A stretch of DNA of 64,000 nt from Macrostomum lignano (taxonomy: Eukaryota), in assembly GCA_002269645.1 (NCBI GenBank), contig NIVC01000413.1:62001-126000 (forward strand), read 5' to 3'. Position numbers and translations under genes: made by a program. Positions 2,591 to 43,581 of the stretch are shown here, piece by piece; position 1 is the first letter of the stretch; the number at the start of each line of letters is the position of its first letter. Under the pieces are notes generated by a model. It was given only the letters and a program-made list of their open reading frames with translations. It was not told the DNA's origin and made no database searches.

Positions 2591-3041
2591 TCAAGAAAAA
2601 ACTGTCAACTCCACTTTCCATGGACTTAATTGGACTTTCGATTTCGATGATGCCGACTCGCCGATGCGCTGATTGACAGCTGCAGGCGACTCTCCTGTAG
2701 CATCCTCGGTCCGTACACATTCCTGTTCAAGCCGGATTCGCTTACTGATGTCCTGATGGCCGGATTCAGGCTGCCGAAGTTCAACTGAATCACTCGATGA
2801 TGATGAGCGTTTTTGTTGGGCGCAATGCTCGCCAATCGGCTGATCGCGACTGTGTCGCTGTGGAGGGCTCGCCGTTTCCGCCAGTCTCACCAGCTGGTCT
2901 CGAGCTCGGCCGGCCATACCGGCTATCAGTAGGCTGCGTCTCAAATCAATTCCGCTGCGTTTGCGTCGCTGCTGGAGGGCCTTAGCAACCGACAGCTGTA
3001 GAAGTCCGCGAGCTACCGCCACGGCCGAATGGTATCGTTGG

Positions 3042-3076
<35 letters not shown>

Positions 3077-3127
3077 CGGCTTCTCACTACCATCTTCATT
3101 GTTCATGATTTCTGTCTGTCTGTCCAT
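2591..3127 (-). CDS. Immediate-early-response (IER2/IER5-like) protein, 178 aa, intronless, poly-Q N-terminus
   Basis: ARGLLQLSVAKALQQRRKRSGIDLRRSLLIAGMAGRARD matches the pattern of the IER family N-terminal motif (LSxxK..R.QRGG(I/L)xL(H/R)xxL..S.V.R.AR); intact ATG-to-TGA ORF; low-complexity S/Q-rich C-terminus. Confidence 0.7.
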
Positions 3128-3215
3128 AAGTTGAAACCAATTCTAATGGCCGGCAGCTTAGTTCAGCTTTTTGAAGAAGTCAGCTGGCGGTCTACAATTC
3201 CCATAAACGGTAAAT

Positions 3216-3238
3216 TTTTATACCGAATGGGGGGGCGG
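3216..3238 (-). promoter_or_regulatory. Putative core promoter of the IER-like gene (TATAAAA plus adjacent GC box)
   Basis: Minus-strand TATAAAA at 3222-3216, about 90 bp upstream of the ATG; GGGGCGG at 3232-3238; GC-rich upstream region. Confidence 0.45.
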
Positions 3239-4039
3239 TCGGTCACGGTCGCAGCTTTAATAAGCCCAGACGGCCAGACCCTCTCTTTAATTATAGACCT
3301 CGCTGCAGTGAAGGCTAAAACTGCCGTGTGCCAGAAAACCGCCCACTCGATTTCTGCCCCCACTTCAATTGCACCCACCCCCACTGTGCGCGGGTTTCAT
3401 TCATCCATGGGTGGGTGGTGTTGGCTTCGTCTGAGCTAAAAATAGAATCGCCGCGGCCGAAACAACAACCCCGCCGCCTGATTGTCCTGATATTAACTAA
3501 ACTGTGCTAAAAATAGCTACCCAATGGAGGGATTCCCCTTCAGCCACAAACCCCCTCCGCGCCCAGCCCTCTCAATCCAAATGCGGGGGTGTGAAAAACT
3601 AAAAAGTCGGTTGGTTCAAGCCTTGACTGCTGTCAGCCAATTTCCATTCACAGTTAAATGCTGGCTGGGGGCATGGGGGCGGCACGGCGGACTGAAATGA
3701 ATTATTCTGCACGGACTTTGCTGCTCAAACGGGCCGCGGGCGCTATATTATTGTTTTCGCCACATTCAGCAGTTCGTTTCTGGTGCGCTAATTTATAGCT
3801 GGATATGCGAGTGTTTCAAAAGCAAAGGGGATGTCAACTTAAGCACCAGAATGGAGCCCGAAGTTCAGCTCCGCACCAAACCGACTGCAACTTGTCGGCC
3901 CAGACGACTAGAATCGCTGAGACATTCGCTGTGCCACTAGGTTCCGGTATGTCATTGAGTGCTGCTTTGCTGCCAATAAGCAGGACAAATGTGTTAACAA
4001 GAGGCACAAACCGAATCAGTGACTGCAGTCAGCCGGCTT

Positions 4040-4790
4040 CAGCGAGCGCAGCTGATTAGACGTTGTTATCGAGAACTCGATGGCAAAGTACAACGGGGCG
4101 TTTCCACGTTTTGAATCATTTAAACAGCTGCCACCGTCATGGACAGGGCTATCGTTGTTCGAATTCGGTCAGAATTTCTTGCGCCGAGTGCTCTTGTCCA
4201 ACGAACTGGACGAAATTGAGCAGCTGCACTTCAACTGTGATATGACGCGTGTCCCCCCTGCTATCACAAGGGCATGGATTGCCGAAAACCCGCTGGATCC
4301 AAAAAGCTCGGGGTTCCCCCGAATTTCCCCCGAAAAGGTTTCGGTGGGTCCGTATCAACTAAATCAAGCCGATGAATACTCTCGTACATTCAAAACATTC
4401 GTGTCAAAGAGGTTCTCGGTAGCTACGAAGGTGACTCCTGGAGAGACTTTGAGTCGCTCAAATCCGAACTTCCGAGCCATCTGAAGTGTTGGAAGTTTCG
4501 GCAAGAGACGCAGCCAGAAATCTGAAGCAACCGATTCGGTCAGTGGCATCCGTCTTGGATTTTTCTAGCTGTCGTTTTCTCGCGCCATACTTCGAAATTC
4601 TACCGCGTGATTCTTAGTGTCTGACAGCAGCGGACAATCGCTTTGGTTTTAGAGATCCAGGATTGCAACTTCTTCATGGCTACTACTCGTCAGCAAAAGC
4701 TGGAAGTAGGACTGCAGGCTGCGATTGTCATGTAATGGCAGTGCTCAAACTCCTGGGCTGCTACGCTTACCACCAAGATAGCTATCGAAG
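4040..4790 (+). pseudogene. Decayed transposase C-terminus with SWIM-type zinc-finger remnant
   Basis: Pieces across frames: VVIENSMAKYNGAF (last DDE Glu region), FPRISPEKVSVGPYQLNQADEY, SRHTSKFYRVIL, GYYSSAKAGSRTAGCDCHVMAVLKLLG (compare GWYCxCKxGxRTxGCCxHV); several stops and frameshifts; N-terminal DDE part absent. Confidence 0.55.
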
Positions 4791-4970
4791 GTCTGGTGCC
4801 AGCCTTCGCTTTGTTGATTTCGCTCTTCCACGCAGCCTTGTTGCCAGTCTTCATGCCAGAGAAAATGCTTTACCACAGCAGCGAAAGCCTACTGAGCAAC
4901 AGTTTAGCGGCCAGCCAGCCAGCAGTCAGCCAGCAGCAGCTCACGATCCAAGCCTCAGTCTTCAAGAGTC

Positions 4971-5746
4971 TTTGGTCTTCAAAACCGTGGTCAGCAGTGC
5001 TACGCAATTGTTGTTGCACTGTTTCACTGCATCAGCAGAAAAGTTCAGCTCTTTCAGCCGGTCAGAGGTGAACACCGCAATGACCAACCTGATGACGTCT
5101 ATGGCGATTGAGCAAGTGTAGATCAACTTGTCGAAGCTATCCGAAGCCGATATCCGCAGCAGTTTGCGCCAAGACAGCAACACTGCATGAACGAGCTGCT
5201 ACAGTGCATTCTGCCAGAGTTGCAGCTGCAGCGTCATTGCCAAATCGAATTTACACTCGTACGTGCGGTAGTTGCCTGACTAGCACGGTGGAGCTGCCCA
5301 TAGGAGTTCTGGACAATCGTATCCTCAGCATCTCCTTGCAGGAGTTTTCAACCGCGCCGTTAATTCTAGACGGTCTCTATGCTGCTTTTACGGCACCAAA
5401 GCACGTCCCATGCACCAACACCAACTGTGCAGCTGATAGTGTGCAGGAGGATCAGATCTCTAACGGCAGAGTGACCCTGATGCATATAGATCGCATTGGA
5501 ACCGATGGGCAAAAACTGAATATGCAAGTCTGGTGGACAAGCCCAGCAGGTAACATCTCCAGCTTGGGATGTCCAATATTCACAGTGTCCCGTTACGGTA
5601 GTACGCCCTTGGAAGGACACAATACATCTTGTGTCCTGAAGGATGGAGTATGGAATAAGCTGGACGACATGAGAGTTCAAAGAAACTACAATCCATTCTT
5701 TCATGAGCAATATTTTATTACCTTAGTAGCCCTGCTGCAAGTATAA
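4971..5746 (+). pseudogene. Decayed ubiquitin-specific protease (USP, peptidase C19)-like domain inside the transposon
   Basis: Frame 3: Cys box FGLQNRGQQCYAIVVALFHC (Cys codon 4998-5000), stop at 5109-5111, then PQQFAPRQQHCMNELLQCIL (QQD-box-like); shift to frame 2 near 5255: RTCGSC..PCTNTNC (Zn ribbon) and His box GHNTSCVLKDGVWNKLDDMRV (His codon 5618-5620). Confidence 0.65.
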
Positions 5747-6199
5747 AGAGACCCATGGGATCATCGGCGAGCATGTTTACACCATAACCCTTTCTGCAAA
5801 CTAATAACCATACTGTTTCATTTCGTTCAAAAAAGCATCCGGAGCGTTGCTTTGGGCTCCATTCCAGAGCCTTAAGTTGACATGAGATCCCCATTTTATC
5901 CCCTTTATCCCCTGGGACCCCAAGGAAGGGACCCGGATGGGATGTCTCGGCGATTCTAGTCGTCTGGGCCGACAAGTTATCGATTGCAGTCGGTTTGGTC
6001 CGGAGCTGAACTTCGGGCTCCATTCCAGAGCCTTAAGTTGACATCCCCTTTTTACCATCTTCAATCACTGTATAATACGTACTTATACTTATACAGTACT
6101 TGTATTCTTATACATGTAAAACATGTTTAATGTTATAAACTTAATGAATGACACATGAATGACACATTAATGAATAAATGTTAAACATGTTTTATACTA

Positions 6200-7470
6200 A
6201 CTTATACAGGCTGCGGAATACCTATTTGGTATTTAGAAACGCACTTAATCTGTTGTTATACTAAACAGACGTTTACATGTTAATACTTCCAATTCTTGCC
6301 TTGGCCATCAGACATACTAGGATTGTCCAAGGAGAAAATCGAGAAAAAGGTTGATATCATATCCAAAGTATTCTATCATTGGAGAGCGGCAACGCTAAAA
6401 AATGTACAGTTTTACACTTTACAGTTTACAGTTTACAGTTTACATTTTACATTTTACATTTTACAGTTTACAGTTTACAGTTTACAGTTTACATTTTACA
6501 GTTTACAGTTTACAGTTTACGAGCGTACAGTTTACAGTTTGCAGTTTACAGTTTACAGTTTACAGTTTTCAGTTTACATTTTACAGTTTATAGTTTTCAG
6601 TTTACATTTTACAGTTTACAGTTTACAGTTTACAGTTTACAGTTTACGCTTTACAGTTTACAGTTTACAGTTTACAGTTTACAGTTTACAGTTTACGCTT
6701 TACAGTTTACAGTTTACAGTTTTCAGTTTACAGTTTACAGCTTACTGTTTTACAGTTTCAGTTTACAGTTTACAGTTAACCGTTTACAGTTTACAGTTTA
6801 CAGTTTACAGTTTACAAATTACAGTTTACAGTTTACAGTATTCAATTTACAGTTTACAGTTTACTGTTTTCAGTTTACAGTTTACAGCTTACAGTTTTCA
6901 GTTTACAGTTTTCAGTTTACAGTTTTCAGTTTACAGTTTACAGTTTACAGTTTTTAGCTTACACTTTACAGTTTACAGTTTTACAGTTTACAGCAAACTG
7001 TAAACCGCTTGCTGGTTTCATTTGGAATGATTCATTTGGAATTTGGAAGTCTTTAAAGCTGAATGAAATATTAGGAATTTCAGGACTGAAAAAGTCAGCC
7101 CAGCCCGCACACAGATTAAAAATGGAGAACTATTGAAATTACATATTTCCTGTATTCTCTCGATTTTGTTAAAATTGATACGCTTGATTCATCGGATATC
7201 CCTTATAATTGATTTCCAAAAATGGTACACTCGATGTCGCGGCTCCCACGCAGATGCGCATCATTTATCCTGCCTCCTACACGATAACTAAGCTTTAAGC
7301 CATCTAAGAAATTATTATAATCTTCGGATGATTGCAGAATTTACAGTCGGCAATACTCGTAATTCATACTCATAGCCAAATATCAGCTATTACCCAGAAA
7401 TTATTTTAGAATCTGCCTCCCTGGCCTCTCTTAAAACGGATTTGAATTGGAACTTAATTAGCTCGTAATT
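6200..7470 (+). mobile_element. Possible highly degraded CR1/L2-type LINE 3' fragment, interrupted by the TTTACAG array
   Basis: Weak translated hints only: PEIILESASLASLKTDL (7400-7450) resembles the LINE ORF2 C-terminal LP..V..A.SL..FK..L motif; TRCRGSH near 7230. Confidence 0.25.
6404..6993 (+). repeat. 7-bp tandem repeat (TTTACAG)n, about 80 units
   Basis: Direct reading; variants TTTTCAG, TTTACAT, TTTACGC; produces the YSLQFTV repeat ORFs. Confidence 0.97.
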
Positions 7471-7751: not shown

Positions 7752-8420
7752 CCATCCAGGGTCACCAGGGTCACCATCCAGGGTCACCATCCAGGGTCAC
7801 CATCCAGGGTCACCATCCAGGGTCACCATCCAGGGTCACCATCCAGGGTCACCATCCAGGGTCACCATCCAGGGTCACCATCCAGGGTCACCATCCAGGG
7901 TCACCATCCAGGGTCACCATCCAGGGTCACCATCCAGGGTCACCATCCAGGGTCACCATCCAGGGTCACCATCCAGGGTCACCATCCAGGGTCACCATCC
8001 AGGGTCACCATCCAGGGTCACCATCCAGGGTCACCATCCAGGGTCACCATCCAGGGTCACCATCCAGGGTCACCATCCAGGGTCACCATCCAGGGTCACC
8101 ATCCAGGGTCACCATCCAGGGTCACCATCCAGGGTCACCATCCAGGGTCACCATCCAGGGTCACCATCCAGGGTCACCATCCAGGGTCACCATCCAGGGT
8201 CACCATCCAGGGTCACCATCCAGGGTCACCATCCAGGGTCACCATCCAGGGTCACCATCCAGGGTCACCATCCAGGGTCACCATCCAGGGTCACCATCCA
8301 GGGTCACCATCCAGGGTCACCATCCAAGTGCGCCATTCAAGAGCGCCATCCAAGGGTGCCATCCAAGGGTGCCATCCAAAGGGTGCCATCCAAGGGTGCC
8401 ATCCAAAGGGTGCCATCCAT
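7752..8420 (+). repeat. 13-bp minisatellite (CCATCCAGGGTCA)n, about 43 perfect units with a degenerate 3' tail
   Basis: Perfect array 7775-8326; related units GCGCCATCCAAG / GGGTGCCATCCAA on both flanks. Confidence 0.97.
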
Positions 8421-8829: not shown

Positions 8830-8960
8830 ACTACTACTGTTTAGCTGACAGTAAAGTACTACTACTACTACTACTGCTACTACTACTACTACTACTACTA
8901 TTACTGCTAGTACTACTACTACTACTACTGCTACTACTACTACTACTACTACTACTATTG

Positions 8961-9022
<62 letters not shown>

Positions 9023-9023
9023 G

Positions 9024-9076
<53 letters not shown>

Positions 9077-9173
9077 GCTAGTACTACTACTACTACTACT
9101 GCTAGTACTACTACTACTACTACTGCTAGTACTACTACTACTATTACTGCTAGTACTACTACTACTACTACTG

Positions 9174-9244
<71 letters not shown>

Positions 9245-9245
9245 G

Positions 9246-9316
<71 letters not shown>

Positions 9317-9382
9317 GCTAGTACTACTACTACTACTACTGCTAGTACTACTACTACTACTACTGCTTCTATACTACTACTG

Positions 9383-9427
<45 letters not shown>

Positions 9428-9448
9428 GTACTACTACTACTACTACTT

Positions 9449-9536
<88 letters not shown>

Positions 9537-9548
9537 GTGCTACTACTA
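8830..9548 (+). repeat. (CTA)n trinucleotide microsatellite, about 720 bp, with CTG/GTA interruptions
   Basis: Direct reading. Confidence 0.97.
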
Positions 9549-15347: not shown

Positions 15348-18300
15348 ATGTCTAACGACAGTCTGTCTGAGTACAGGCCCAGAGACAACGACAATCACAA
15401 ACAGCAGGGAAGGCGGCAGCAGCAGCGGCAGCAGCAGTTAGTAGACGCAGATCAAGCCGAGGCGGTTGCCCCAGTTGAGGTCAGCAAGTTCAGCGTGGAG
15501 GCGCCAAAGTACGACAGTCCGAACTCCTCTCGTCAGGAGGTTCGCGTTGCCGCAGCGGGAGCAGCTTCGTCATCGCGATTCGACGACGAGAAGCGATCGA
15601 CGCCAAAGCAAGCCGAGGACGGCAGTCAGAACAGGCGGGAAATAAAGGAGGAACGAGGCGGTGCCACTTATAGTGAGCTCTTATACCTAAAATGCATATT
15701 TGACACAATAGTTTAGGGTACAAGCAGGTACTTACCTTAAATGCACGATAGAGTTTGTTATAGCTTTTTGCGTTCTGGTTTGGACTGCGGGCTTTTAATT
15801 TGGACACAGAGTTGAGCAAAGCCCAGAGAATGCTGGCTAGTCTATGGCACAAACCAGAAGCAACTGACGGGCTTTTAAATTCGACAGCGGGCACAAATTT
15901 GGACAGTCTTTTCCTTCCCCTTTCTCTTGCATGTTTTTTCTTGAGCCAGCGCACAAAGTACACGACGAGTTTTTTAGAAGGAAGAAACAGGCTCTGACAA
16001 TGCAAGAGTCTTAAAGTTTAAAGTTTTAGAAAATTGTATCTAACGGTTTGGATAAGTTCAATGTTTGGGTCAAATATCCAGATTCATGACCTACCCTCAA
16101 AAACTGATTACTGTCGTTCTTAACTTTGATCTTCTTGTCTTCTGTGTCCAAAGGGGATGCGAACTTAAGCTCCAGAATAGAGCTCGAATGAGGCCAGCAG
16201 ATCAAACCGACTGGAATCGATAACTTGTCGGCCCAGATGACTATAACCGTCTGGACATTTGGCCCTGTACTCTTATTTAATGAATGAGAAGTCAAAGGGA
16301 GATTGTATTTTAAATGCATGTAATGTCTTCGTATTGTTATATTTATTTTTGCAGCACTCCTTTATTAGTCGGAAGCAAATATAAAATATTTGTAAATTAA
16401 CAAGTTGAAAGTTTTGAAAAAAACGTTTACTTAAATGTTTGTCATCTTGAATGCAAAATGCGCTTTAGCTGTCGTCATACTAGTGGCAGCTCACTAACTG
16501 CCTAAGCCTGCACCAGTGCGATCAATGTAAGGAATCCTGTTTCATGAACGAATGGATTCCGACTTGGTTCAATCCTCATGTCATCGATTTTATACCAGAC
16601 GTTGCTTTTAAAGATGCAGCAGGTGTAGTGCCCTTCCCGAACAATTTTTTGCGGGTCGCCTCTTAAGGTGGAGGGGGGGGGGCGACCGCTTCCCCACCCG
16701 CCAGCCCGAGTGGCGCTGATGGCACCTTATGGTATTGGGCAATAGACCGTAAAAAATTCGCGGCCTAAACCAAAAACTGAAATGTGAGGGCCATTGACTC
16801 GCTTCTTGGTTTCCAAAATAATCACTATCCTTAACATGGCTTAAGGGCTGCATAACACTGCGCTTCCTTGAGATAAACTCTAGAGCCTTAAATTCACATG
16901 AAATCCCCATTTATCCCATTTCTTCCCCAGGACCCAGTAGAATAGACTCGGGTGGGATGTGTCAGCGTTTGTAGTCATCCGGGCCGACAAGTTATCGATT
17001 CCAGTCGGTTTGATCTGCTGGCCTCATTCGAGCTCCATTCTGGAGCTTAAGTTCGCATCCCCTTTGTGCCTGCTGTCGAATTTAAAAGCCCGTCAGTTGC
17101 TTCTGGTTTGTGCCATAGACTAGCCAGCATTCTCTGGGCTTTGCTTAACTCTGTGTCCAAATTAAAAGCCCGCAGTCCAAACTAGAACGCAAAAAGCTAT
17201 AGTAGGCTTTTTAAATCACTGAGCTTTTAGGCGTGCCCGACAATGCGTCGATGGCAGGGGTCGGCAAATTCCGGCACGTGGGCCACATGCGGCCAGCCAA
17301 GCGTCTTTATCCGGCCCTCAGGTCCTTTGAAACTTCACAGTAGCAATCCAGCTAGCTCAGGGTTTGTCTCTCTTCTCAGCTGTCTTATCTCTTCTCTCAT
17401 CTCCCTTCTCTCCTCGATACGTCATCACTGAACACAAGGGACCTCTCTGCTGATATGAGCTCAGTCTTCTAATCTTTTCTGACAGTTGATCATTGAAACA
17501 CTTTTCAAAAATTTTCTTGATGAAAACTTGTATATTGTTAGTAGGCGTTACCGTAGACATTTCCCGCTGTTAGCGGGGGTTGCGGGAAAGAGTCCTATAG
17601 GGGTGTGGGGGGAGCCCCACATTCAAAACTTGGACAAGCTTGCAGTTTTTCATGCGCAAAAATCAGGTTTAGCACTAATATAATTATTGTTGCTGCAGAT
17701 TAACAATTACTCAAAGATGCGTACAAGTACGCTCGTACTTGTGGTAGCGATTGTTGCTCTCATTAGCTTCACTGACACCCTTGAGGCTCTATTGCATCCA
17801 TTAGCGTGAAGTGGCTTTGGCTATTGACTACAAACCTGACTGTATATTATCTCAATTTATGACATGTAAATGTATATTTTGCGTCACACTTGTAGCCTTA
17901 CAACGTGCAGTGTGCAATAACATAGGAACACTGTACATCAATATGCTAGACAAGACGTCTATAACTTCATACTTGAAACTCATTGTGTAGATAAACACAG
18001 CACTCACATCGCCATCTATGCACCCCAGTAGAAGCCGCCCCAGTGTCAACCGGAGCCATGCAACAGCAGCAAACTCCAAGGCAGAGAGAGGAAGAGCCTT
18101 CGAATGGTTGCGGATGCTGCGAGTGCCTGCTGAAGTTTATCAGCATCATACTCATCATCCTGACCTTCCCGTTCTCCTTGTGCTCCTGCATCAAAATTGT
18201 GCAACAGTACGAACGCGCGGTCATCTTCCGACTCGGCCGGATTCAAGGCGAGCCTAAAGGTAAAGAAACGTTGCTGCCTTAATTGCAACTTCTTTATTGC

Positions 18301-22083: not shown

Positions 22084-25000
22084 CTAGCAATCTTCGCCCC
22101 CCGATGGGGGACATCTGGATAGAACTTCTGTTCTCTACAAGTAAAAAAACCCGCCAAATAGAGTCTTCCTAAAGACAACAGAAAAACTGCTCAAATGAAG
22201 CGCAATGCAAAAAGAAAACATCCCAAGACAGCAAACATCCCCCCTCCTCCCAGATAGCAAGCACCCCCAGATAGCAAGCACCCCCAGATAGCAAGCACCC
22301 CCAGATAGCAAGCACCCCCAGATAGCAAGCACCCCCAGATAGCAAGCACCCCCAGATAGCAAGCACCCCCAGATAGCAAGCACCCCCAGATAGCAAGCAC
22401 CCCCAGATAGCAAGCACCCCCAGATAGCAAGCATCCAATTGATAGCAAGTATCTATCCTTAAATAGCAAGCATCCACCAGACAAAAAGAATATGGTGCAA
22501 CATTTCCTTTTAGCTTTCTAAGGGCTCCTTTATGATTGGCATGACGCTTCTTATTACGTTAGAAAATGTCTCTCCTGTGTTTGAAATGGTGGTTATTTTA
22601 TGTTTGAATTGGTGGCTTTTTAATGTTTGGCATGGTGACTCTTTAATGTTCTACATGGTGGCTCTTTAATGTTTGACAATTTATGTTTGTGCCAGTTTTA
22701 TGTTTGTCATGGTGGCTCCTTAATGTTAGAAACGGTGGCTCTTTAATGTTTGACATGGAGTCACATATATGTTTCACATGGTGGCTCTTCTATGTCTAAC
22801 TTGGTAGCTCTTTTATGTTTGACATCGTGGCTCGTTAATGTTCGACATGGTGGCTCTTTAACGTTCGACATGGTGGCTCTTTAATGTTCGACATGGTGGC
22901 TCTTTACTGTTTGACAATGTGGCTCTTTAATGTTTGACATGGTGGCTCTTTAACGTTTGACATGGGGGCGCTTTAATGTTCGACATGGTGGCTCTTTACT
23001 GTTTGACACGAAGGCTTTTAAATGTTTAACATGGTGGCTCTTTAATGTTTCACATGATGCTCTTTAATGTTTTACATGGTGGCTCTTTGATGTTTAACAT
23101 GGTAGCTCTTTAATATTTTACATGGCGGCTCTTTTATGTTCGACATGGTGACTCTTTAATATTCTTCATGTTATAGCTCTTTCATGTTTGACATGGTGGC
23201 TGTTTAATGTTCGAAATGGTGGTTCTTTAATGTTCGAAATGGTGGCTCTTTAATGTTCGAAATGGTGGCTCTTTAATGTTTGACACAAAGTCACATATAT
23301 GTTTGACATGGTGGCTCTTAAATGTTTGACATGGTGGCTCTTTATGTTTGACATAGTGGCTCTTTGATGTTCGAAATAGTGGCTCTTTTATGGTCGACAT
23401 GGTGGCTCTTTAATGTTCGAAATGGTGGCTCTTTAATGTTGGAAATGGTGGCTCCTTAATGTTTGACACAAAGTCACATATATGTTTGACATGGTGGCTC
23501 TTAAATGTTTGACATCGTGGCTCTTTATGTTTGACATGTTGGCTCTTTTATGTTTGACATGGTGGCTGTTTTATGTTTGACATGGTGGCTCTTTAATGTT
23601 CGAAATGGTGGCTCTTTAATGTTTGACACAAAGTCACATATATGTTTGACATGGTGGCTCTTAAATGTTTGACATGGTGGCTCTTTATGTTTGACATGTT
23701 GGCTCTTTTATGTTTGACATGGTGGCTCTTTTATGTTTGACATGGTGGCTCTTTAATGTTCGACAAAGTGGCTCCTAAATGTTTGACATAGTGGCTCTTT
23801 AATGTTTGACAATGTGGCTTTTGAATGTTTGACATGGTGGCTCTTAAATGATAGACATGGTGGCTCTTTTATGTTCGAAATGGTGGCTCTTTAATGTTCA
23901 AAATAGTGGCTCTTTTATGTTCAACATGGTGGCTCTTTAATGTTCGACATGGTGGCTCTTTGATGTACGACATAATGGCTCTTTAATGTTTGACATGGTA
24001 GCTCTGTTATGTTCGACATGGTGGCTCTTCTAGGTTTGACACGAAGGCTCTTAAATGTTTAACATGGTGGCTCTTTAATGTTTCACATGGTGGCTCTTTA
24101 ATGTTTTACATGGCGGCTCTTTTACGTTCGACATGGTGGCTCTTTAATATTCTTCATGTTATAGCTCTTTCATGTTTGACATGGTGGCTCTTTTATGTTC
24201 GAAATGGTGGCTCTTTTTATGTTCAAAATAGTGGCTCTTTTATGTTCGACATGGTCGCTCTTTAATAATCGAAATGGTGGCTCTTTAATGTACGACATAA
24301 TGGCTCTTTAATGTTTGACAATGCGGCTTTTGAATGTTTGACATGGTGGCTCCTTAATCTTTGACATGGTGGCTCTTTAATGTTCGAAATGGTGGCTCTT
24401 TAATGTTCGACATGGTGGCTCTTTAATTTTCTTCATGGTATAGCTCTTTTATGTTAGACATGGTGGCTCTTTAATGTTCGACATAGTGGCTCTTTAATGT
24501 TTTAAATTGTGGCTCTTTAATGTTTGTCATAAAGTCACATATATGTTTGACATGGTGGCTCCTAAATGTTTTACATGGTGGCTCAATATGTTTGACATGG
24601 TGGCTCCTAAACGTTTTACATGGTGGCTCAATATGTTTTACATGGTGGCTCTTTTTTGTTCTACATGGTAACTCTTTTATGTTTGATACGGTGGCTTTTT
24701 AATGTCTGACATGGTACGGCTCTTTAATGTTCTACATGGTGGCCCTTTAATGTTCGACATGGTGGCTCTTTACTTTTAGACATGGTGGCTCTTTAATGTT
24801 CGATATGGTAGCACTTTAATGTTTGACATCATGCCAGATTTATGTTTGACATGGTGGCTCTTTTAGGTTTGACATGGTGGCTCTTTAATGTTAGACATGG
24901 AGGCTCTTTAATGTTCGACATGGTGGCTCTTTAATGTTTGACATGGTGGCTCTTTAATGTTAGACATGGTGGCTTTTTTATGTTTGACATGGTGGCTCTT

Positions 25001-26849
25001 CTATTTTTGACATGGTGGCTCTTTAATGTTTAACATGGTGGTTCTTTAATGTTCGACATGGTGGTTCTTTAATGTTTGACATGGTGGCTCTTTAATGTTC
25101 TACATGGTGGCCCTTTAATGTTCGACATGGTGGCTCTTTTAGGTTTGACATAATGGCTCTTTAATTTTTGACATGGTGGCTCTTTAATGTTCGATATGGT
25201 GGCTTTTTTATGTTAGACATGGTGGCTCTTTTAGGTTTGACATGATGGCACTTTTGTGTTTTGACATGGTGGCTCTTCTATGTTTGACATGGTGGCTCTT
25301 AAATGGTTGCATGGTGGCTCTTAAATGTTTGACATGGTGGCTCTTTTTTGTTCGATATGGTGGCTCTTTTTTGATCTACACGGTAACTCTTTATGTTTGA
25401 TACGGTGGCTTTTTAATGTCTGACATGTTGGCTCTTTTATGTTTGACATGGCGCTCTTTAATGTTCGACAAAGTGGCTCTTTAATGTTTGACATGGTGGC
25501 TCTTAATTTTTTGACATGGTGGCTCTTTAATGTTCGAAATGGTGGCTCTTTAATGTTCGACATGGTGGCTCTTTTACGTTCAACATGGTGGCTCTTTAAT
25601 GTTTGACATGGTGGCTCTTAATTGTTTGACATGGTGGCTCTTTAATGTTCGAAATGGTGGCTCTTTAATGTTCTTCATGGTATAGCTCTTTTATGTTAGA
25701 CATGGTGGCTCTTTAATGTTTGACATAAAGTCACATATATGTTTGACATGGTGGCTCTTAAATGTTTGACATGGTTGCTCCTAAATGTTTGACATGGTGG
25801 CTCTTTAATGTTCAAAATGGTAGCTCTTTAATGTTCGAAATGGTGGCTCTTTAATGTTCGAAATGGTGGCTCTTTAATGTTCGACAAAGTGGCTCTTTAA
25901 TGTTTGACATGGTGGCTCCTAAATGTTTGACATGGTGGCTCTTTAATGTTCGAAATGGTGGCTCTTTATTTTCGACATGGTGGCTCTTAAATGTTTGACA
26001 TTGTGGCTCCTAAATATTTGACATGGTGGCTCTTTAATGTTTAAAATGGTGGCTCTTTAATGTTCAAAATGGTAGCTCTTTAATGTTCGAAATGGTGGCT
26101 CTTTAATGTTCGAAATGGTGGCTCTTTTATGTTCGAAATGGTGGCTCTTTAATGTTCGACATGGTGGCTCTTTAATGTTCGACGTGGTGGCTCTTTAATG
26201 TTTGACAAAGAGTCACGTGTATGTTTTACATGGTGCCCATGTAATGTTTGACATGGTGCCTCTTTTATGTTTGACATTGTGCTTTTTTATGTTTAGCAGT
26301 TTCGTGTTTTCAAGGTGTTTTAATAAAAAAAATATTTTTCACTACTAAGATTCGACACCAGGTCGCTACGTTGGCAGTCCAGTCTGTTCGTATATAGGCT
26401 ATCTCTTTTTAATTGGAGAACATGAATTGTGGCCCTTATAATTCAATTCTTACAGCAAGTCAATTAGAGTAAAAAGTTATGACATAATCAATTTATCAGT
26501 CAGCCAGTACCAGTATCAATTTAAGTTAGCAATATGGTTACTAACGACTACTATGGTTACACACGACTATTAAATAGTCGTGTGTGCATTTCTTTGGCAC
26601 TGTTTTCAACTTGTTGTGATGCAATCTTTATCAGAATCAGAATTCAGCCAGTCAGTTTTTTCTCTAGCATTCTTACAATGGGTTTTAAGTCAAAAATTTT
26701 GCTTGACCTTTGCAAAAAAGCATGTTTTTCGAATATTTAATCCCTTTAATATTGAGCAATTTCTTAGCCAAGATGCATGTACCGTCCCAGGAAAATTTCT
26801 AATCGAATGGTGCATATAGCTACAAACAACTCATTTTTAGTATATAGGA
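22084..26849 (-). mobile_element. Non-autonomous Helitron family A, solo copy A1 (4766 bp)
   Basis: Minus strand reads A|TCCTATATACTAAAAATG ... hairpin CCCCCATCGGGGG ... CTAG|T, i.e. canonical TC/CTAG ends in an AT site; contains a 17-bp array (22240-22450) and a 23-bp array (about 22620-26290). Confidence 0.85.
22620..26290 (+). repeat. 23-bp satellite array (consensus GACATGGTGGCTCTTTAATGTTT) inside Helitron A1; also about 35660-38770, 39830-42990, 48740-49695 and 50200-52100
   Basis: Direct reading; the 23-aa periodic pseudo-ORFs (MSNIKEPPCQTLKSHHVKHKRAT) equal three 23-bp units. Confidence 0.97.
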
Positions 26850-27849: not shown

Positions 27850-29178
27850 TCAAGGCTGATCGGTCAGATGAACAACAGCATCTTCTTGATCAGCCGCGTT
27901 CACAACAGTTTCAGTCCGTCTGGCTTTGCTCCAGCGCAGCTGCAGATTGGCTGCGTCGCTTGCAGATCTGGCTACCACCGAGTGCCGATGCCTGACGCAT
28001 CGCATTGTGACCAAACTGCGAAAGCAGGCCTTAAATTTGGAGCTAATCAGTACTAAACAAATCGGATTGATGGCGCTATTCGCGTATCCTAGCAACAGAG
28101 CTACAGGCAGAAGCGTCGTCACCAGATAGTCCTCGGTAACCGCTGTCGGCACAGGCGTTGCTGGTGTTGTCGGAGTCTCCGAGCTCGAGTTGGCTGCCGC
28201 CTGCCGCAGGTCGATGAGAATGTTCACTACGTGATAGGGCAGCCAGCAGATGGAGAATGCAGCCAGTAGAACCATCACCACTTTGCTGGCCTTCACTCGG
28301 CCCTGGGTCACCGAGTTTTGCCCGGCCTGATCGCGCGAGAAACGGGCGGTGGACACGAGGCGACGGCTGAGCTTCCAGGAGAATACGGACATGGCTAGCA
28401 GAGGCAGCAGGTACAGCAGACCAAATAGACAGACGGTGTAGATGGTCTTGCGACTGGGGTGCTGGTGCCAATGCTCAACGCAGGTGTGCATGGTCACTAG
28501 CCAGAACACCTGAGCCTCTCGGACCTCGTACACCATGGGTATGGGGCTGCACACAAGCAGTGACAGCAGCCAGATGCCCCCCACCCAGAACCCCATGCGG
28601 GTGTTGGTCAGGGCCTCCTTGGCAACCAGAGGGTAGCGCACTACAACGAAGCGTTTCACGGACAGAGAAGCCAAAGACCAGACGCTGACGGAGATGGACA
28701 GGCCCTGGAGGAACGGCGTCAGCTTGCACAGAACGGAGCCGAATATCCACTGCAGGTGCAGGACATTGTAAATTGTCAGCGGTAGGCAGATCAGAAAGAT
28801 CAGCATGTCGCTCAGGGCCAGGCTTAGTAGAAACAGATTGGTTCGAGAGCGCATTCCTGGGAACACGGTGATGCTGAGGATTACCAGGATGTTGCCAATT
28901 AGTCCAATTAGCAGCAGCAGGCATGAGATAACCAGGATAGGTATTTTAAGCATCTCGTTTTTGCTGCTCATTTTCTGTTCGATAAAGTCGCGACAGAATT
29001 GCATATTCTGCCTCACCAGCTCCTCGGTCAGGGTGCACAGGTAGATGCCCAGCATTCGGTCGCTTACTTTCGCATCTGGAGGCAGGAAGCCATCAGAGCC
29101 AAACATGCTGGAGCTGTTGAAGCTCGACCTGCTTTGGTTAGCGGTTGGCATGTCTTCGCCGAGCATGTACTTTTGCAT
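27850..29178 (-). CDS. Class A (rhodopsin-like) neuropeptide-type GPCR, 442 aa, intronless CDS; closest in pattern to the orexin/allatotropin/NPFF/SIFamide receptor group
   Basis: Seven hydrophobic segments; GN (TM1), LALSD (TM2), WIFGSVLCK (ECL1), FLQGLSISVS (TM3), W (TM4), ECL2 Cys, LLP (TM5), CWLPY (TM6), NSAINP (TM7), helix-8 SSKFK. Confidence 0.92.
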   Translation of the reverse strand: MQKYMLGEDMPTANQSRSSFNSSSMFGSDGFLPPDAKVSDRMLGIYLCTLTEELVRQNMQFCRDFIEQKMSSKNEMLKIPILVISCLLLLIGLIGNILVILSITVFPGMRSRTNLFLLSLALSDMLIFLICLPLTIYNVLHLQWIFGSVLCKLTPFLQGLSISVSVWSLASLSVKRFVVVRYPLVAKEALTNTRMGFWVGGIWLLSLLVCSPIPMVYEVREAQVFWLVTMHTCVEHWHQHPSRKTIYTVCLFGLLYLLPLLAMSVFSWKLSRRLVSTARFSRDQAGQNSVTQGRVKASKVVMVLLAAFSICWLPYHVVNILIDLRQAAANSSSETPTTPATPVPTAVTEDYLVTTLLPVALLLGYANSAINPICLVLISSKFKACFRSLVTMRCVRHRHSVVARSASDAANLQLRWSKARRTETVVNAADQEDAVVHLTDQP

Positions 29179-30269
29179 GTAGTAAACGCAGCACCAGGCC
29201 TGATTGTAGTAGAGCCTGAAAGAGGGAGAGAGCAGTTCACGGTCTGACTTTTGTGAACGATTTTTAACTTGTCAGACTGCCGGAGAAAGTTTTACTAAGC
29301 CAGGATTTTCCAATTTCGACGGAATGGACCAACTGGAAAAGCACTTCTCCATCAAATAGAATTATAATTCAAGAGAGAAAATTTAGTCACGCAAACTGAG
29401 CGAAAGAATTCAATTTTCAGATGAAAATTGACATCCCAATGTAACCGGGATTTGATTAAAAGATTTTGATTAAAGAGAAAATTGATTGCAGCTTTTATCA
29501 GTTATTCCTGCTTCTTCCTAGATTTTGCCAGTTAGCGCCTGACTCAGGTAATTCGAATTTAGAAATCGCATTAGTTCAGTAGTCGCGGGAGAAGACCTCA
29601 ACTCAATGGTCTTAGCAATTAGAAGAAGAAGTGAGTTCAGCTTGGTGCTGCCGCGCTGTCAAAGCAACCGGCTCTCGACACCGGCCCTACGCAGCAACTG
29701 TTCGCACGCAATCGCCTCTTGTGACTTCTGTTGCAGAAAAACACGAATCTATACTCGTGCGCTCTGCGTCACTGCAGGCGGGTGGTTTTAAAAGAAAGTC
29801 GCCTAAAAAATAGAATCAAGAGGGAGAAGTACCGACAGCAGGAACACGGAGAGGCTTTCATTAAGAAGAAGAAGAACTCGTAGAAAAAGATGAGATTAGG
29901 AGCTGAATAAATTGAATGCTTCGCTGAGGCACTCCATCCATTCTCGATTGGAACTCTGTCATCCTCCGAGTTCCCGCGCTGGCTTACAAGTCGGAAGAGT
30001 GTGCTGGACCTTGACCAGTGAATAAAGTGGATCGAATTCAAGTGCCAAGAGAGAGAGAGAGAGAGAGAGAGTAAAGAAGTTAAAGAATGATTTTTACTCT
30101 TAAATCAATTATTTTATAGCCAACCTTCTCCTACTTCTCCGAGTGAGGAGATGAAAGAATCGAAGGGTATTGATGATGGAGAGCGGGCGTGTGAGAAACA
30201 GAACTTGGGTAGAATATCTGACCTGAATCGCGTCTTAGATTTAGACAGCGACATGCAGACAGACAGGGG

Positions 30270-30447
30270 AGGAGGAGGCAGGGGAGAAGGAGACAGGGAA
30301 GAGGGAGACAGGAGAGAGGAAAATATAAGAGACGGAGATAGGGGAGAGGGAGACACGGGAGGGGGAGATAGGAAGAGAGAGAGAGAAGAGAGGAGCAGAT
30401 AGGGGAGAGATCGACCAGGGAGGAGGAGACAGGAAGTGAGAGAGAAA

Positions 30448-30497
<50 letters not shown>

Positions 30498-31000
30498 AGG
30501 AGCAGATAGGGGAGAGGGAGACAAGGGAGGAGGAGATAGGGGAGAGGGAGACAAGGGAGAGGGAGACAGCGGAGAGGGAGACAGCGGAGAGGGAGACAGC
30601 GGAGAGGGAGACAGTGAAGAGGGAGACAGCGGAGAGGGAGACAGCGGAGAGGGAGACAGTGAAGAGGGAGACAGCGAAGAGGGAGACAGCGGAGAGGGAG
30701 ACAGCGGAGAGGGAGACAGCGGAGAGGGAGACAGCGGAGAGGGAGACAGCGGAGAGGGAGACAGCGGAGAGGGAGACAGCGGAGAGGGAGACAGCGGAGA
30801 GGGAGACAGCGGAGAGGGAGACAGCGGAGAGGGAGACAGTGAAGAGGGAGACAGCGGAGAGGGAGACAGCGAAGAGGGAGACAGCGGAGAGGGAGACAGC
30901 GGAGAGGGAGACAGCGGAGAGGGAGACAGCGGAGAGGGAGACAGCGGAGAGGGAGACAGCGGAGAGGGAGACAGCAGAGGGGGAGACAGCAGAGGGGGGA
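30270..31000 (+). repeat. Purine-rich tract: (GA)n plus 15-bp minisatellite (GGAGAGGGAGACAGC)n at about 30510-30990; further (GA)n at 30044-30070
   Basis: Direct reading; plus strand is mostly G and A. Confidence 0.95.
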
Positions 31001-42300: not shown

Positions 42301-43581
42301 TTGACATGGTGGCTCTTTTATGTTCGACATGGTGGCTCTTTTTTGTTCTACATGGTAACTCTTTTATGTTTGATACGGTGGCTTTTTAATATCTGACATG
42401 GTGGCTCATCTATGTTTGACATTGTGGCTCTTCTGTGTTTGACATGGTGGCTGTTTAATGTTTGACATGGTGGCTCTTTAATGTACGACATAATGGCTCG
42501 TTTAAGTTGGACATGGTGGCTTTTTAATGTTTGACATGGTAGCTCTGTTATGTTCGACATGGTGGCTCTTTTAGGTTTGACATGGTGGCTCTTAAATGTT
42601 TCACATGGTGGCTCTTAAATGTCTTACATGGTGGCTCTTTTATGTTTGACAATGTGGCTGTTTAATGTTTTACATGGCGGCTCTTTTATGTTCGACATGG
42701 TGGCTCTTTAATGTTTGACATGCTAGCTCTTTAATGTTCGACATAGTGGCTCTTTTATGTTTGGCATGGTGGCTATTTAATGTTCTTCATGGTGGCTCTT
42801 TTACGTTTGACATGGTGGGTCTTTAATGTTCGACGTGGTGGCTCTTTAATTTTCGAAATGGTGACTCTTTTATGTTTCACATGGTGGCTCTTTAATGTTT
42901 GACATAGAGTGACGTATATGTTTTACATGGTGCCCATGTAATGTTTGACATGGTGCCTCTTTTATGTTTGACATTGTGCTTTTTTATGTTTAGCAGTTTC
43001 GTGTTTTCAAGGTGTTTTAATAAAAAAATCTTTTTGCAGCACTAAGATTGGAACCCAGGTCGCTGCATTAGCAGTCCAGTCTGTTCGCATCTATGCTATC
43101 TCTTTTCAATTGGCGAACATGATTTGTGGCCCTTATAATTCAATGCTTACAGCAAGTTGGTTAGAGTAAAAAGTTATGACATAATCAATTTCTTAGTCAG
43201 CCAGTATCAGTGTCAATTTAAGTTAGCAATATTGTTACGCAATTTCAATCAAGTTGTGTGTGCATTTCTTTGGCACTGTTTTCAACTTGTTGTGATGCAA
43301 TCTTTATCAGAATTGAAATTCAGTCAGTCAGTTTTTTCTCTAGCATTCTTACAATGCATTTCAGATCGAAAGAGCCGCTTGACCTTTGCAAAAAAGCCTG
43401 TTTTTCGAATATTTAATCCCTTTAATATTGAGCAATTTTTTAGCCAAGATGCATGTACCGTCCCAGGAAAATTTCTGATCGAATGGTGCAAGTTTGAAGA
43501 AAATCGGTTGAGCCATTTTTTCTGAAATCTATCGCATACCTACCCACATACATACAGACAACTCATTTTTAGTATATAGGA
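39354..43581 (-). mobile_element. Helitron A3 (4228 bp)
   Basis: Same termini; a ~641-bp internal duplication in the 23-bp array (marker at 40801 and 41442). Confidence 0.85.

What the first reader, a model, noticed from the sequence alone, without database searches (positions are those of the whole stretch)
3827..6048. Spy-like DNA transposon carrying a ubiquitin-specific protease (USP/C19) domain downstream of its transposase/SWIM region
Seen: inside one pair of TIRs, co-oriented and in order, lie a transposase C-terminal remnant, a SWIM-like motif, a Q/P/S linker and all three USP signature blocks at plausible spacing. These are the Cys box GLQNRGQQCY, QQHCMNELL and the His box GHNTSCVLKDGVWNKLDDMRV, with a Cys-rich ribbon between them. 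The ORF track hides the first two blocks because of a stop and two frameshifts. Established: some transposons carry Ulp1/SUMO or OTU proteases, and USPs use a Cys-His-Asp/Asn triad. Inference: the autonomous parent encodes a transposase with a fused or companion deubiquitinase, possibly protecting the transposase from proteasomal turnover or removing repressive H2A/H2B ubiquitin at target sites. I do not know of a described C19-carrying Spy/PHIS element.
Basis: partly seen in the sequence, partly recalled or inferred. Interest (0 to 1): 0.82.

Follow-up and report, generated by a model that had tools for sequence, protein, structure and literature searches.

The report
Dead flatworm transposon carrying a deubiquitinase
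A decayed, non-autonomous cut-and-paste transposon of a Macrostomum flatworm really does carry the remains of a ubiquitin-specific protease gene that belongs to the transposon family, which adds a deubiquitinase to the accessory genes known from AAA|TTT-inserting (Spy-like) transposons; the claimed transposase and SWIM parts are not supported.

Summary
The sequence observation holds. Window 3827-6048 is a 2.2-kb element with about 100-nt terminal inverted repeats (TIRs), inserted between AAA and TTT. It contains a broken reading frame with the three USP blocks and a CxxC...CxxxxC ribbon.

The USP call is now solid, but only through relatives. The window copy scores below Pfam's cut-off (UCH 13.6 bits). 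Its C-terminal 162 aa match an intact 362-aa environmental protein (P0002) at E=5e-18, and P0002 is a clear Pfam UCH member (55 bits). A family profile hits only USPs in the PDB.

The USP is a family feature. A second, diverged element in the window (16153-17062) keeps the same ORF tail with a canonical GHY His box, the same stop codon and coding-type substitutions.

A paralogous empty site shows AAA|TTT insertion without target-site duplication, which is the Spy signature.

Not supported:
- The "SWIM" motif lies in 134 nt that the intact relative lacks.
- No DDE transposase similarity was detected. The conserved region upstream of the USP has unknown function.

No full-length parent was found. 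Transposon-borne C19 domains have precedents (a Trichomonas vaginalis transposase-C19 protein, and Helentrons). This is a new variant of a known kind, present here only as dead copies.

The parts
3824..3826 (.). AAA half of the host target site (no target-site duplication)
   Evidence: Flank read. For the sister element, a paralogous empty site reads AAATTT uninterrupted.
3827..3925 (+). Left terminal inverted repeat (99 nt), terminus GGGGATGTCAACTTAAG
   Evidence: 94/107 columns identical to the right TIR. The terminus pattern occurs only at the four element ends in the window.
4080..4372 (+). 5' coding remnant starting at an ATG (MAKYNGAFPRF...). No detectable homologue outside this transposon family. 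Probably the N-terminus of the parent's protein.
   Evidence: ORF 4080-4484. The same N-terminus is retained in the internally deleted copy read through by UniRef protein P0001 of Macrostomum lignano. No Pfam hit. A frame change between 4373 and 4453 is the likely deletion junction (inference).
4454..4615 (+). Conserved region X (54 aa, codons starting at positions with p mod 3 = 2). In-frame TGA at 4521-4523 where the relative has TGG. Function unknown.
   Evidence: 54% aa identity to L001 nt 3-164. 74% nt identity over 4481-4566. Substitutions by codon position 19/16/31. No Pfam, NCBIfam or PDB hit.
4616..4749 (+). 134-nt stretch absent from the intact relative. A GT...AG pair at 4617/4741 (125 nt) would restore the frame, so it is a candidate intron or an insertion.
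   Evidence: tblastx collinearity: L001 164->167 against window 4615->4750. Sequence read. No similarity to anything else in the window, L001 or L002. The intron reading is inference.
4750..4964 (+). Conserved post-X segment (4750-4869, LLGCYAYHQDSYRR...LPRSLVASL) followed by a Q/P/S-rich linker
   Evidence: 47.5% aa identity to L001 nt 167-286. Collinear full-length alignment.
4959..5257 (+). USP domain, N-terminal part: Cys box GLQNRGQQCY (4974-5003, catalytic Cys 4998-5000), premature TGA 5109-5111, QQH box QQHCMNELL (5175-5201)
   Evidence: Pfam UCH model positions 2-102 match, E=0.05, 13.6 bits, below the cut-off. Aligned with GLRNIGNDCYANSALQ and QQHCLLEF of P0002.
5258..5746 (+). USP domain, C-terminal part: zinc ribbon CGSC (5264-5275) and CTNTNC (5411-5428), His box GHNTSC...WNKLDDMRV (5615-5677, catalytic His 5618-5620), stop TAA 5744-5746
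   Evidence: HMMER against 1.84 billion representatives: P0002 E=5.1e-18 (33% id, full length) and P0003 E=6.5e-12. P0002 is Pfam UCH at E=1.1e-14, 55.2 bits, above the 23.9 cut-off.
5838..5883 (+). Internal extra copy of the outer 46 nt of the TIR, followed by a 58-nt spacer (5884-5941). The same arrangement is present in the sister element.
   Evidence: D2, 89% identical to 5999-6044. Element region 5863-6048 matches 16879-17062 at 78.7%.
5942..6048 (-). Right terminal inverted repeat (107 nt)
6049..6051 (.). TTT half of the host target site
16153..17062 (.). Sister element (910 bp, MITE-like). TIRs 16153-16257 and 16958-17062 (94% identical to each other, 76-79% to the first element). Also flanked AAA|...|TTT.
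16502..16636 (-). Remnant of the same USP ORF tail in the sister element: EGHYTCCIFKSNVWYKIDDMRIEPSRNPFVHETGFLTLIALVQA*, with a canonical GHY His box and the stop at the homologous position
   Evidence: Regex hit. tblastx 56% aa identity over 45 codons including the stop. 61% nt identity with substitutions by codon position 17/9/25, chi-square p=0.023.
15759..15905 (-). Paralogous empty site for the sister element: the reverse complement reads ...TGTCCAAATTTGTGCC... without the element
   Evidence: 98% identity to 16145-16152 plus 17063-17201 across the insertion point

Best explanation
Window 3827-6048 is a dead, internally deleted (non-autonomous) copy of a TIR transposon family of a Macrostomum flatworm. 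The family inserts in the Spy manner, precisely between AAA and TTT with no target-site duplication.

The 3'-most part of the family's coding region encodes a real ubiquitin-specific protease (peptidase C19) domain. It has a Cys box, a QQH box, a four-cysteine zinc ribbon and a His box. It is preceded by a low-complexity linker and a conserved region of unknown function ('X').

The USP is an inherited, once-selected component of the transposon lineage. It is neither a chance motif match nor a one-off recent capture.

Both copies in this window are relics that cannot make the protein:
- The first has two premature stops, at least three frame changes and very probably a deletion of the middle of the ORF.
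- The second keeps only the last 45 codons.

Inferred, not shown: in the autonomous parent the USP acted as a deubiquitinase serving transposition. It may have shielded the transposase or a repair/chromatin factor from ubiquitin-dependent removal, as proposed for the OTU/VTD/Ulp1 domains of other transposons. Whether it was fused to the transposase or made as a separate protein is open.
For: Element anatomy: about 100-nt TIRs, and a terminus motif found only at the four element ends.

Host and family: UniRef protein P0001 of Macrostomum lignano is a mis-prediction that reads through a shorter copy of the same element. Its translated TIR is identical over 28 aa.

Spy-type insertion: both elements are flanked AAA|...|TTT, and a paralogous empty site reads AAATTT. 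This is the criterion used in PMC4122938.

USP identity:
- Window 5258-5743 matches P0002 at E=5e-18 and P0003 at E=6.5e-12, out of 1.84 billion proteins.
- P0002 is Pfam UCH at 55 bits, above the 23.9 cut-off.
- The repaired window protein aligns end to end with the L001 protein: 35% identity over 399 columns, pairwise E=9e-73.
- A family profile gives 64 PDB hits, all USPs, best 2.3e-8.
- A low-confidence AlphaFold model of P0002 gives Foldseek top-50 hits that are all USPs, E about 1e-11.

Family feature and past selection:
- The sister element keeps the ORF tail with GHY and the same stop. It is 56% aa and 61% nt identical, with substitutions 17/9/25 by codon position.
- The X-linker-USP order is conserved in L001, where the USP ORF is intact.
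- Only two relatives exist in the whole library. That patchy distribution fits a mobile gene better than a conserved host gene.
Against: - No DDE transposase was found in this element, elsewhere in the window, or next to the relatives. The link between the USP and a transposition machinery is therefore inferred from deletion-derivative logic only.
- No full-length parent was retrieved.
- The two relatives sit on 1.3-kb contigs without visible TIRs, so they could be host genes of unknown organisms.
- The window copy alone is below Pfam's threshold.
- Homology with the sister element covers only 45 codons, and its orientation relative to the right subterminal block is inverted.
- The Spy terminal consensus GGANNNNG is only approximately matched.
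Confidence: 0.7

Rival explanations
1. One reading: the autonomous parent makes one polypeptide, a DDE (Spy/PHIS) transposase with a SWIM finger, a linker and a USP. Region 4040-4790 is then the transposase C-terminus.
For: - Region X and the USP are adjacent and co-oriented in both the window and L001.
- A 125-nt GT-AG removal would join them in frame in the window.
- By eye, X (RFGQWHPSWIFL ... LLGCYAYHQ) loosely recalls the end of DDE_Tnp_4 as I remember it (ERxFGxLKxRFRxL ... aCxvLHN). This is a memory-based lead only.
- A transposase-C19 protein exists in Trichomonas vaginalis (PMC2836005).
Against: - No Pfam DDE_Tnp_4, DDE_Tnp_1 or SWIM hit, even at E<=10, in the correct frames. No NCBIfam IS-transposase hit. 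No PDB hit.
- The position where the catalytic E would align is Ser in both the window and the intact relative.
- The CxC of the 'SWIM' lies in the 134 nt that L001 lacks, and the C and H of 'GCYAYH' are not conserved there (ILGHYSYE).
- In L001, X and the USP ORF are 2 nt out of frame.
Confidence: 0.25
2. Transduplication: a non-autonomous element once captured part of a host USP gene (X-linker-USP). The two window elements descend from that single capture, and the USP never served transposition.
For: - No transposase was found.
- Both window copies are non-autonomous.
- L001 and L002 show no TIRs and could be host genes.
- Gene capture by DNA transposons is common (HELIANO discussion, PMC11417382).
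Against: - No Macrostomum or other host protein close to the segment was found in the k-mer searches or the exhaustive HMMER search. Only two environmental fragments matched.
- The two elements differ by 39% at nucleotide level in the tail, yet keep the frame, the stop and a 3rd>1st>2nd substitution pattern. This indicates coding constraint during their divergence.
- The segment sits where the 3' end of a parent's ORF is expected in deletion derivatives.
Confidence: 0.2
3. Chance resemblance: the USP 'blocks' are fortuitous motifs in non-coding transposon DNA.
For: The window copy alone gives only Pfam UCH E=0.05 and no USP in a single-sequence PDB search.
Against: E=5e-18 to a bona fide Pfam UCH protein over the full 162 aa. 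End-to-end alignment at E=9e-73. Profile hits only USPs. Motif expectation is near zero.
Confidence: 0.01

Closest known systems
Spy transposons (PHIS superfamily; Han et al. 2014, PMC4122938; cgSpy, PMC11304231)
   Same: TIR elements inserted precisely between AAA and TTT with no target-site duplication, shown here by flanks and by a paralogous empty site. TIR length is within the reported range (9-1,474 bp). Many non-autonomous deletion derivatives.
   Different: - Described Spy elements encode a single DDE transposase and nothing else. This family carries a USP domain.
- No DDE domain is visible in these copies, so phylogenetic membership is untested.
- The terminal GGANNNNG consensus is only approximated (GGGGATGT...).
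- Flatworms are not among the hosts listed in those papers.
Transposase-associated Peptidase C19 in Trichomonas vaginalis (XP_001314237.1: transposase_11/pfam01609 + C19; cited in PMC2836005 from Gladyshev & Arkhipova 2009)
   Same: A C19 ubiquitin hydrolase domain associated with a DDE transposase.
   Different: A protist protein with a different Pfam transposase family. I could not retrieve or compare its sequence. Here no transposase domain is demonstrated.
Deubiquitinase or SUMO-protease domains in other transposons: UCH, OTU and VTD in Helitron/Helentron (PMC11417382, PMC9741609); OTU/Ulp1 in Ginger1 and Ulp1 in Mutator-like elements (PMC2836005)
   Same: A papain-fold ubiquitin or ubiquitin-like protease carried as a stable accessory domain at a fixed position in the element's coding region. 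The proposed role is protecting transposition proteins or engaging repair.
   Different: Different transposition mechanisms (rolling-circle, integrase-like, Mutator). Apart from the Helentron UCH, different protease families.
Cellular USPs (e.g. USP2, USP12/46, USP1, USP15, USP18, USP21)
   Same: Cys box, QQD-type box, zinc-ribbon fingers and His box in the canonical order. Profile and fold matches are exclusively to these.
   Different: - Only 13-20% identity in the structural alignments.
- A compact core of about 270 aa.
- QQH instead of QQD.
- No affinity to a particular USP subfamily.
- Only two close relatives in 1.84 billion proteins.

Membership tests
Peptidase C19 / USP (Pfam UCH PF00443) | Cys box with catalytic Cys (GLxNxGNxCYxNSxLQ) | tested here: met
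   GLQNRGQQCY at 4974-5003. Degenerate after the Cys in this copy. Canonical in the relatives: GLRNIGNDCYANSALQ (P0002) and GLRNTGNSCYANCAVQ (L002).
Peptidase C19 / USP (Pfam UCH PF00443) | His box with catalytic His and downstream Asp/Asn (GHY...W..[FL]DD..V) | tested here: met
   GHNTSCVLKDGVWNKLDDMRV at 5615-5677. GHYTCCIFKSNVWYKIDDMRI in the sister element. GGHYTASVWHNGAWWLMDDSRV in P0002.
Peptidase C19 / USP (Pfam UCH PF00443) | Profile score above Pfam's gathering threshold | tested here: inconclusive
   The window copy scores 13.6 bits against a cut-off of 23.9, so it is not met on its own. Its homologue P0002 (E=5e-18 to the window) scores 55.2 bits, which is met. The family profile hits 64 PDB USPs and nothing else.
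Peptidase C19 / USP (Pfam UCH PF00443) | USP fold (thumb-palm-fingers) with a zinc ribbon in the fingers | tested here: met
   CxxC...CxxxxC is conserved in the window, P0002 and L002. A model of P0002 (mean pLDDT only 51.5; C-terminal half 60-89) gives Foldseek top-50 hits that are all USPs, E about 1e-11, TM 0.45-0.55.
Peptidase C19 / USP (Pfam UCH PF00443) | Isopeptidase activity on ubiquitin | not testable with these tools
   Needs Ub-AMC or Ub-probe assays on an intact family member.
Spy transposons (PHIS) | [quoted passage not shown] | tested here: met
   Flanks of both elements. The paralogous empty site rc(15759-15905) reads TGTCCAAATTTGTGCC.
Spy transposons (PHIS) | Terminal inverted repeats with the terminal 5'-GGANNNNG-3' consensus | tested here: inconclusive
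   TIRs are present. The termini are GGGGATGTCAAC and GGGGATGCGAAC. The GGA is offset by 2 nt and the last position is A rather than G (consensus from PMC4122938).
Spy transposons (PHIS) | Single ORF encoding a D(79-80)D(44-62)E transposase that groups with Spy in a phylogeny | tested here: inconclusive
   No DDE domain is detectable in these deleted copies or in the window. No autonomous copy was retrievable. No Spy reference sequence was available to compare.
SWIM zinc finger (PF04434) | CxCxnCxH signature recognised by the profile and conserved in relatives | tested here: not met
   The spacing is CxC-x10-C-x3-H. No Pfam hit. The CxC lies in 4616-4749, which L001 lacks, and the later C/H are not conserved in L001.
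PIF/Harbinger-type transposase (DDE_Tnp_4 PF13359) | Profile match including the third catalytic acidic residue | tested here: not met
   No hit at E<=10 for region X in the correct frame, from either the window or L001. My by-eye alignment puts Ser where the catalytic Glu would be.

The most novel reading that the evidence does not exclude
The autonomous parent of this family is a Spy-type (AAA|TTT, no duplication) cut-and-paste transposon whose transposase is fused, through region X and a flexible linker, to an active USP deubiquitinase. This would be a DDE transposase with a built-in deubiquitinase in an animal, forming a transposon-specific USP clade that is almost unsampled in databases.
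Probability: 0.3. Interest if true: 0.75.

Novelty: new variant of a known kind. Interest (0 to 1): 0.55.

Why it matters
Several unrelated transposon classes carry ubiquitin or SUMO proteases: Helitron/Helentron OTU, VTD and UCH; Ginger OTU/Ulp1; Mutator Ulp1; and a Trichomonas transposase-C19 protein. Nobody has shown what these proteases do for transposition.

A USP in a small TIR element would add an independent acquisition, in a superfamily so far described as encoding only a transposase. Spy elements have also been shown to work in human-cell transposition assays (PMC11304231). If an intact member can be recovered, it becomes directly testable whether deubiquitinase activity is needed for cut-and-paste transposition, using the wild type against a catalytic-Cys mutant.

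It would also extend Spy-type insertion to flatworms, and it defines a USP clade seen only three times so far.

The copies in this window are dead, so nothing here is functional today.

Tried and rejected
- My first 'repair' of 4400-4740 used the wrong frames. The correct frame for 4454-4615 emerged only from comparison with L001.
- Pfam on the C-terminal piece alone gave no hit. A single-sequence PDB search gave no USP.
- The k-mer protein search with the USP region alone gave nothing. The search with the long repaired protein gave only the mis-predicted M. lignano protein P0001.
- Exact-sequence look-ups of P0001 and of two window ORFs are not on record.
- Metagenome scans with the L001 protein and with a two-sequence alignment found no relatives. 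A four-sequence alignment was too diverse to scan. The viral contig scan found nothing.
- P0007 is only a generic USP. P0004-P0006 are repeat-protein noise.
- Region X against Pfam, NCBIfam and a PDB profile gave nothing.
- The cgSpy supplement holds no transposase sequence to compare. The Gladyshev & Arkhipova 2009 paper is not held.
- The 134-nt stretch is not a duplicate of neighbouring sequence.
- L001 and L002 show no TIR-like ends.
- The large ORFs of the window contain no transposase.
Full report
**1. What is in the sequence**

Window 3827-6048 is bounded by inverted repeats: 3827-3925 on the left and 5942-6048 on the right. Of 107 aligned columns, 94 are identical. The differences are five substitutions, a 1-nt indel and a 7-nt indel. 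The terminus GGGGATG(T/C)(C/G)AACTTAAG occurs four times in the window, only at the ends of this element and of a second one at 16153-17062. The chance expectation is 0.5 matches.

- GLQNRGQQCY at 4974-5003.
- QQHCMNELL at 5175-5201.
- GHNTSCVLKDGVWNKLDDMRV at 5615-5677.

Between them lie two cysteine pairs, CGSC at 5264-5275 and CTNTNC at 5411-5428. The USP part is broken by a frame change at about 4945-4970, a TGA at 5109-5111 and a frame change at about 5250-5262.

Relaxed regular expressions for the three blocks are expected 0.03, 0.12 and 0 times per simulated 64-kb window.

**2. Whose element it is**

The only close database match of the repaired protein is P0001, a UniRef entry of Macrostomum lignano (flatworm). 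It is a gene mis-prediction that reads straight through a shorter copy of the same element. It contains the translated TIR (28 identical residues), the MAKYN... N-terminus, an out-of-frame stretch of 4796-4915 and the other TIR.

The window therefore comes from Macrostomum or a very close relative. The family is multi-copy, with internally deleted derivatives. The window is otherwise mostly satellite DNA with one GPCR gene.

**3. Is it a USP?**

On its own the window copy is not convincing:
- Pfam UCH gives E=0.05 and 13.6 bits, against a cut-off of 23.9. Only the Cys-box-to-QQ-box part matches.
- The C-terminal piece alone gives nothing.
- A single-sequence PDB search gives no USP.

The exhaustive HMMER search settled the question. 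I used the exact ORF piece 5258-5743 against 1.84 billion representative proteins. It found two true relatives, each matched over the whole 160 residues:
- P0002, 362 aa, E=5.1e-18, 33% identity.
- P0003, 252 aa, E=6.5e-12.

P0002 has textbook motifs: GLRNIGNDCYANSALQ, QQHCLLEF, RTCRRC...CEQPGC and GGHYTASVWHNGAWWLMDDSRV. It passes Pfam UCH at E=1.1e-14 and 55.2 bits.

Further support:
- The repaired window protein aligns end to end with the protein of contig L001 (which carries P0002): 35% identity over 399 columns, pairwise E=9e-73.
- A profile of the four family sequences hits 64 PDB sequences, every one a USP, best USP15 at 2.3e-8.
- An AlphaFold model of P0002 is of low confidence overall (pLDDT 51.5; 60-89 in the C-terminal half). 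It still retrieves only USPs in the top 50 Foldseek matches, at E about 1e-11 and TM 0.45-0.55.

The domain is a USP. The window copy is a pseudogene of one.

**4. Family feature or one-off capture?**

The second element (16153-17062, 910 bp) has TIRs 76-79% identical to the first. It keeps, on its minus strand, the last 45 codons of the same ORF: EGHYTCCIFKSNVWYKIDDMRIEPSRNPFVHETGFLTLIALVQA*. This is 56% identical to the first element's tail, and it ends at the homologous stop codon.

The two tails are only 61% identical at nucleotide level. The differences fall 17/9/25 on codon positions 1/2/3 (chi-square p=0.023). That pattern is expected if both lineages evolved as coding sequence after they split.

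No host protein close to the segment exists in the searched collections. The only relatives are two 1.3-kb contigs, one from a JGI metagenome and one from a Logan SRA assembly.

This is inheritance within a transposon lineage, not a single recent capture. An old capture at the base of a non-autonomous lineage cannot be excluded. I give it 0.2.

**5. What lies upstream of the USP**

Comparison with L001 corrected the frames.

- Window 4454-4615 encodes a conserved 54-residue region, 'X': SLKSELPSHLKCWKFRQETQPEI*SNRFGQWHPSWIFLAVVFSRHTSKFYRVIL. It is 54% identical to L001, and the window's TGA aligns with a Trp codon in L001.
- An 86-nt core of X is 74% identical at nucleotide level.
- Substitutions are third-position biased, 19/16/31.
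- Homology resumes at 4750-4869 (LLGCYAYHQDSYRR...LPRSLVASL, 47.5%) and runs through the linker into the USP.

Between the two blocks the window has 134 nt (4616-4749). L001 has only 2 nt there.

A GT at 4617 and an AG at 4740-4741 delimit 125 nt whose removal restores the frame. The stretch may therefore be an intron, or it may be an insertion (inference). It is not a duplicate of anything nearby. Either way, the SWIM reading fails on three counts: wrong spacing, no profile hit, and no conservation.

Region X and the N-terminal remnant (4080-4372) match nothing in Pfam, NCBIfam or the PDB. By eye, X faintly recalls the last helix of PIF/Harbinger-type transposases as I remember them. But the residue that would be the catalytic Glu is Ser in both sequences. 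I record this as a lead, not evidence.

The total coding capacity between the TIRs is about 514 codons. That leaves no room for a DDE core, so this copy is best read as a deletion derivative. It keeps the two ends of the parent's coding region, with the junction somewhere in 4373-4453 where the frame changes (inference).

**6. Superfamily**

Both elements are flanked AAA|...|TTT.

For the second element the window itself supplies a paralogous empty site. The right flank, plus the last 8 nt of the left flank, is 98% identical to the reverse complement of 15759-15905. That sequence reads ...TGTCCAAATTTGTGCC... without the element.

So AAA and TTT are host nucleotides and nothing is duplicated. 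This is the behaviour that defines Spy elements (PMC4122938; confirmed experimentally for cgSpy, PMC11304231).

The left-side homology at the empty site is only 8 nt, so more sites would be welcome. The conserved Spy terminus GGANNNNG is only approximated. Without a transposase, phylogenetic membership is untested. 'Spy-like by insertion signature' is the defensible label.

**7. How it most likely works**

Shown:
- A USP domain with the catalytic Cys, His and Asp positions present. These are intact in P0002 and L002.
- A zinc ribbon.
- A fixed position at the 3' end of the family's coding region.
- Evidence of past purifying selection.

Inferred:
- In the autonomous parent the domain removed ubiquitin from a substrate relevant to transposition. 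The candidates are those discussed for other transposon-borne deubiquitinases: protection of the element's own proteins from proteasomal turnover (PMC9741609), or engagement of ubiquitin-controlled DNA repair after excision and insertion (PMC2836005).
- Nothing in the sequence points to a particular substrate or chain type. The PDB and fold matches show no subfamily preference.

The two copies in this window are inert.

**8. Novelty**

The literature I could search gives these precedents:
- Spy and other PHIS elements are described with a transposase, plus Myb/SANT or YqaJ partners in the sister groups. No protease is mentioned (PMC4122938, PMC4482050).
- Transposon-borne C19 is not new in general. 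Bao et al. mention a Trichomonas vaginalis protein combining transposase_11 (pfam01609) with Peptidase C19 (PMC2836005).
- HELIANO lists UCH among the domains stably carried by Helentrons (PMC11417382).
- Targeted searches found no description of a USP in a Spy/PIF/Harbinger-type element. Repbase itself could not be consulted.

I therefore rate this as a new variant of a known kind. It is of moderate interest, mainly because it could give an experimentally tractable case if an intact copy exists.

**9. Limits**

- No genome of the host could be queried.
- The relatives lack context.

The decisive step is a genome-wide retrieval of the family in M. lignano.

Noticed in passing
window 16153-17062, compared with 3827-6048: In the sister element the USP tail is on the opposite strand relative to the shared right subterminal block (16879-16956, matching 5863-5941). 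One of the two elements has therefore undergone an internal inversion. Recombination between the left TIR end and the internal TIR-end-like copy (5838-5883), which are in inverted orientation, would produce exactly this arrangement.
   Followed up: partly
window 15759-15905 and 17063-17201: A 147-nt inverted duplication (98% identical) brackets the sister element and about 240 nt of spacer. One arm served as the empty site. What this repeat is remains unknown.
   Followed up: partly
window 5838-5883 and 16879-16900: Both elements carry an extra internal copy of the outer part of the TIR about 60 nt inside the right TIR. The arrangement predates their divergence. It could be an internal transposase-binding site or a scar of aberrant repair.
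   Followed up: no
window 4481-4566 vs L001 30-115: An 86-nt ungapped patch of 74% nucleotide identity between the window and an environmental contig whose USP is only 33% identical at protein level. This is unusually strong conservation for this pair. It could reflect a cis-acting sequence, overlapping reading frames or a very constrained peptide.
   Followed up: partly
L001 nt 160-170: In the intact relative, region X (frame 3) and the USP ORF (frame 2) are offset by 2 nt, and the two open frames overlap by about 150 nt. This could be a frameshift mutation or assembly error, two overlapping ORFs, or recoding. It is unresolved.
   Followed up: partly
L002 nt 230-250: Upstream of the USP reading frame in the Logan contig there is an AT-rich stretch ending in ...gctgcttttatag. 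This looks like a 3' splice acceptor and suggests an intron in roughly the same region as the window's candidate intron 4617-4741.
   Followed up: no
window 22696-26294, 35654-42991, 48743-49696, 50229-52088: Four large arrays of a 23-bp satellite (TTTAATGTTTGACATGGTGGCTC; the largest has 318.5 copies). They are interleaved with 17/18-bp CCCCCAGATAGCAAGCA arrays at 22249-22433, 35164-35592, 39528-39726, 48310-48739 and 49742-49981.
   Followed up: no
window 44191-47446; 6405-6993; 7765-8326; 8857-9548; 30261-30998; 63601-64000: Further tandem arrays: 48-bp (68 copies), 7-bp TACAGTT directly right of the element, a perfect 13-bp CCAGGGTCACCAT array, a (TAC)n run of 690 nt, a 15-bp array and a 27-bp array. 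They account for most of the long 'ORFs' in the window.
   Followed up: no
window 27853-29178 (-): An intact 442-aa ORF encoding a rhodopsin-family GPCR (Pfam 7tm_1, E=7e-50). It is the only clear host gene found among the ten large ORFs scanned against Pfam.
   Followed up: partly
window 2591-3127 (-) / 3029-3439 (+): A CAG/CTG repeat giving a poly-Q run in a 178-aa minus-strand ORF (poly-L on the other strand), about 700 nt left of the element. No Pfam match.
   Followed up: partly
window about 56900-62500: Short-word hits recur at spacings of about 1.2-1.6 kb (56905, 58106, 59722, 61210, 62492) and 2.77 kb (59189/61960, 59416/62187). This suggests a long-period tandem duplication in the last 8 kb.
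   Followed up: no
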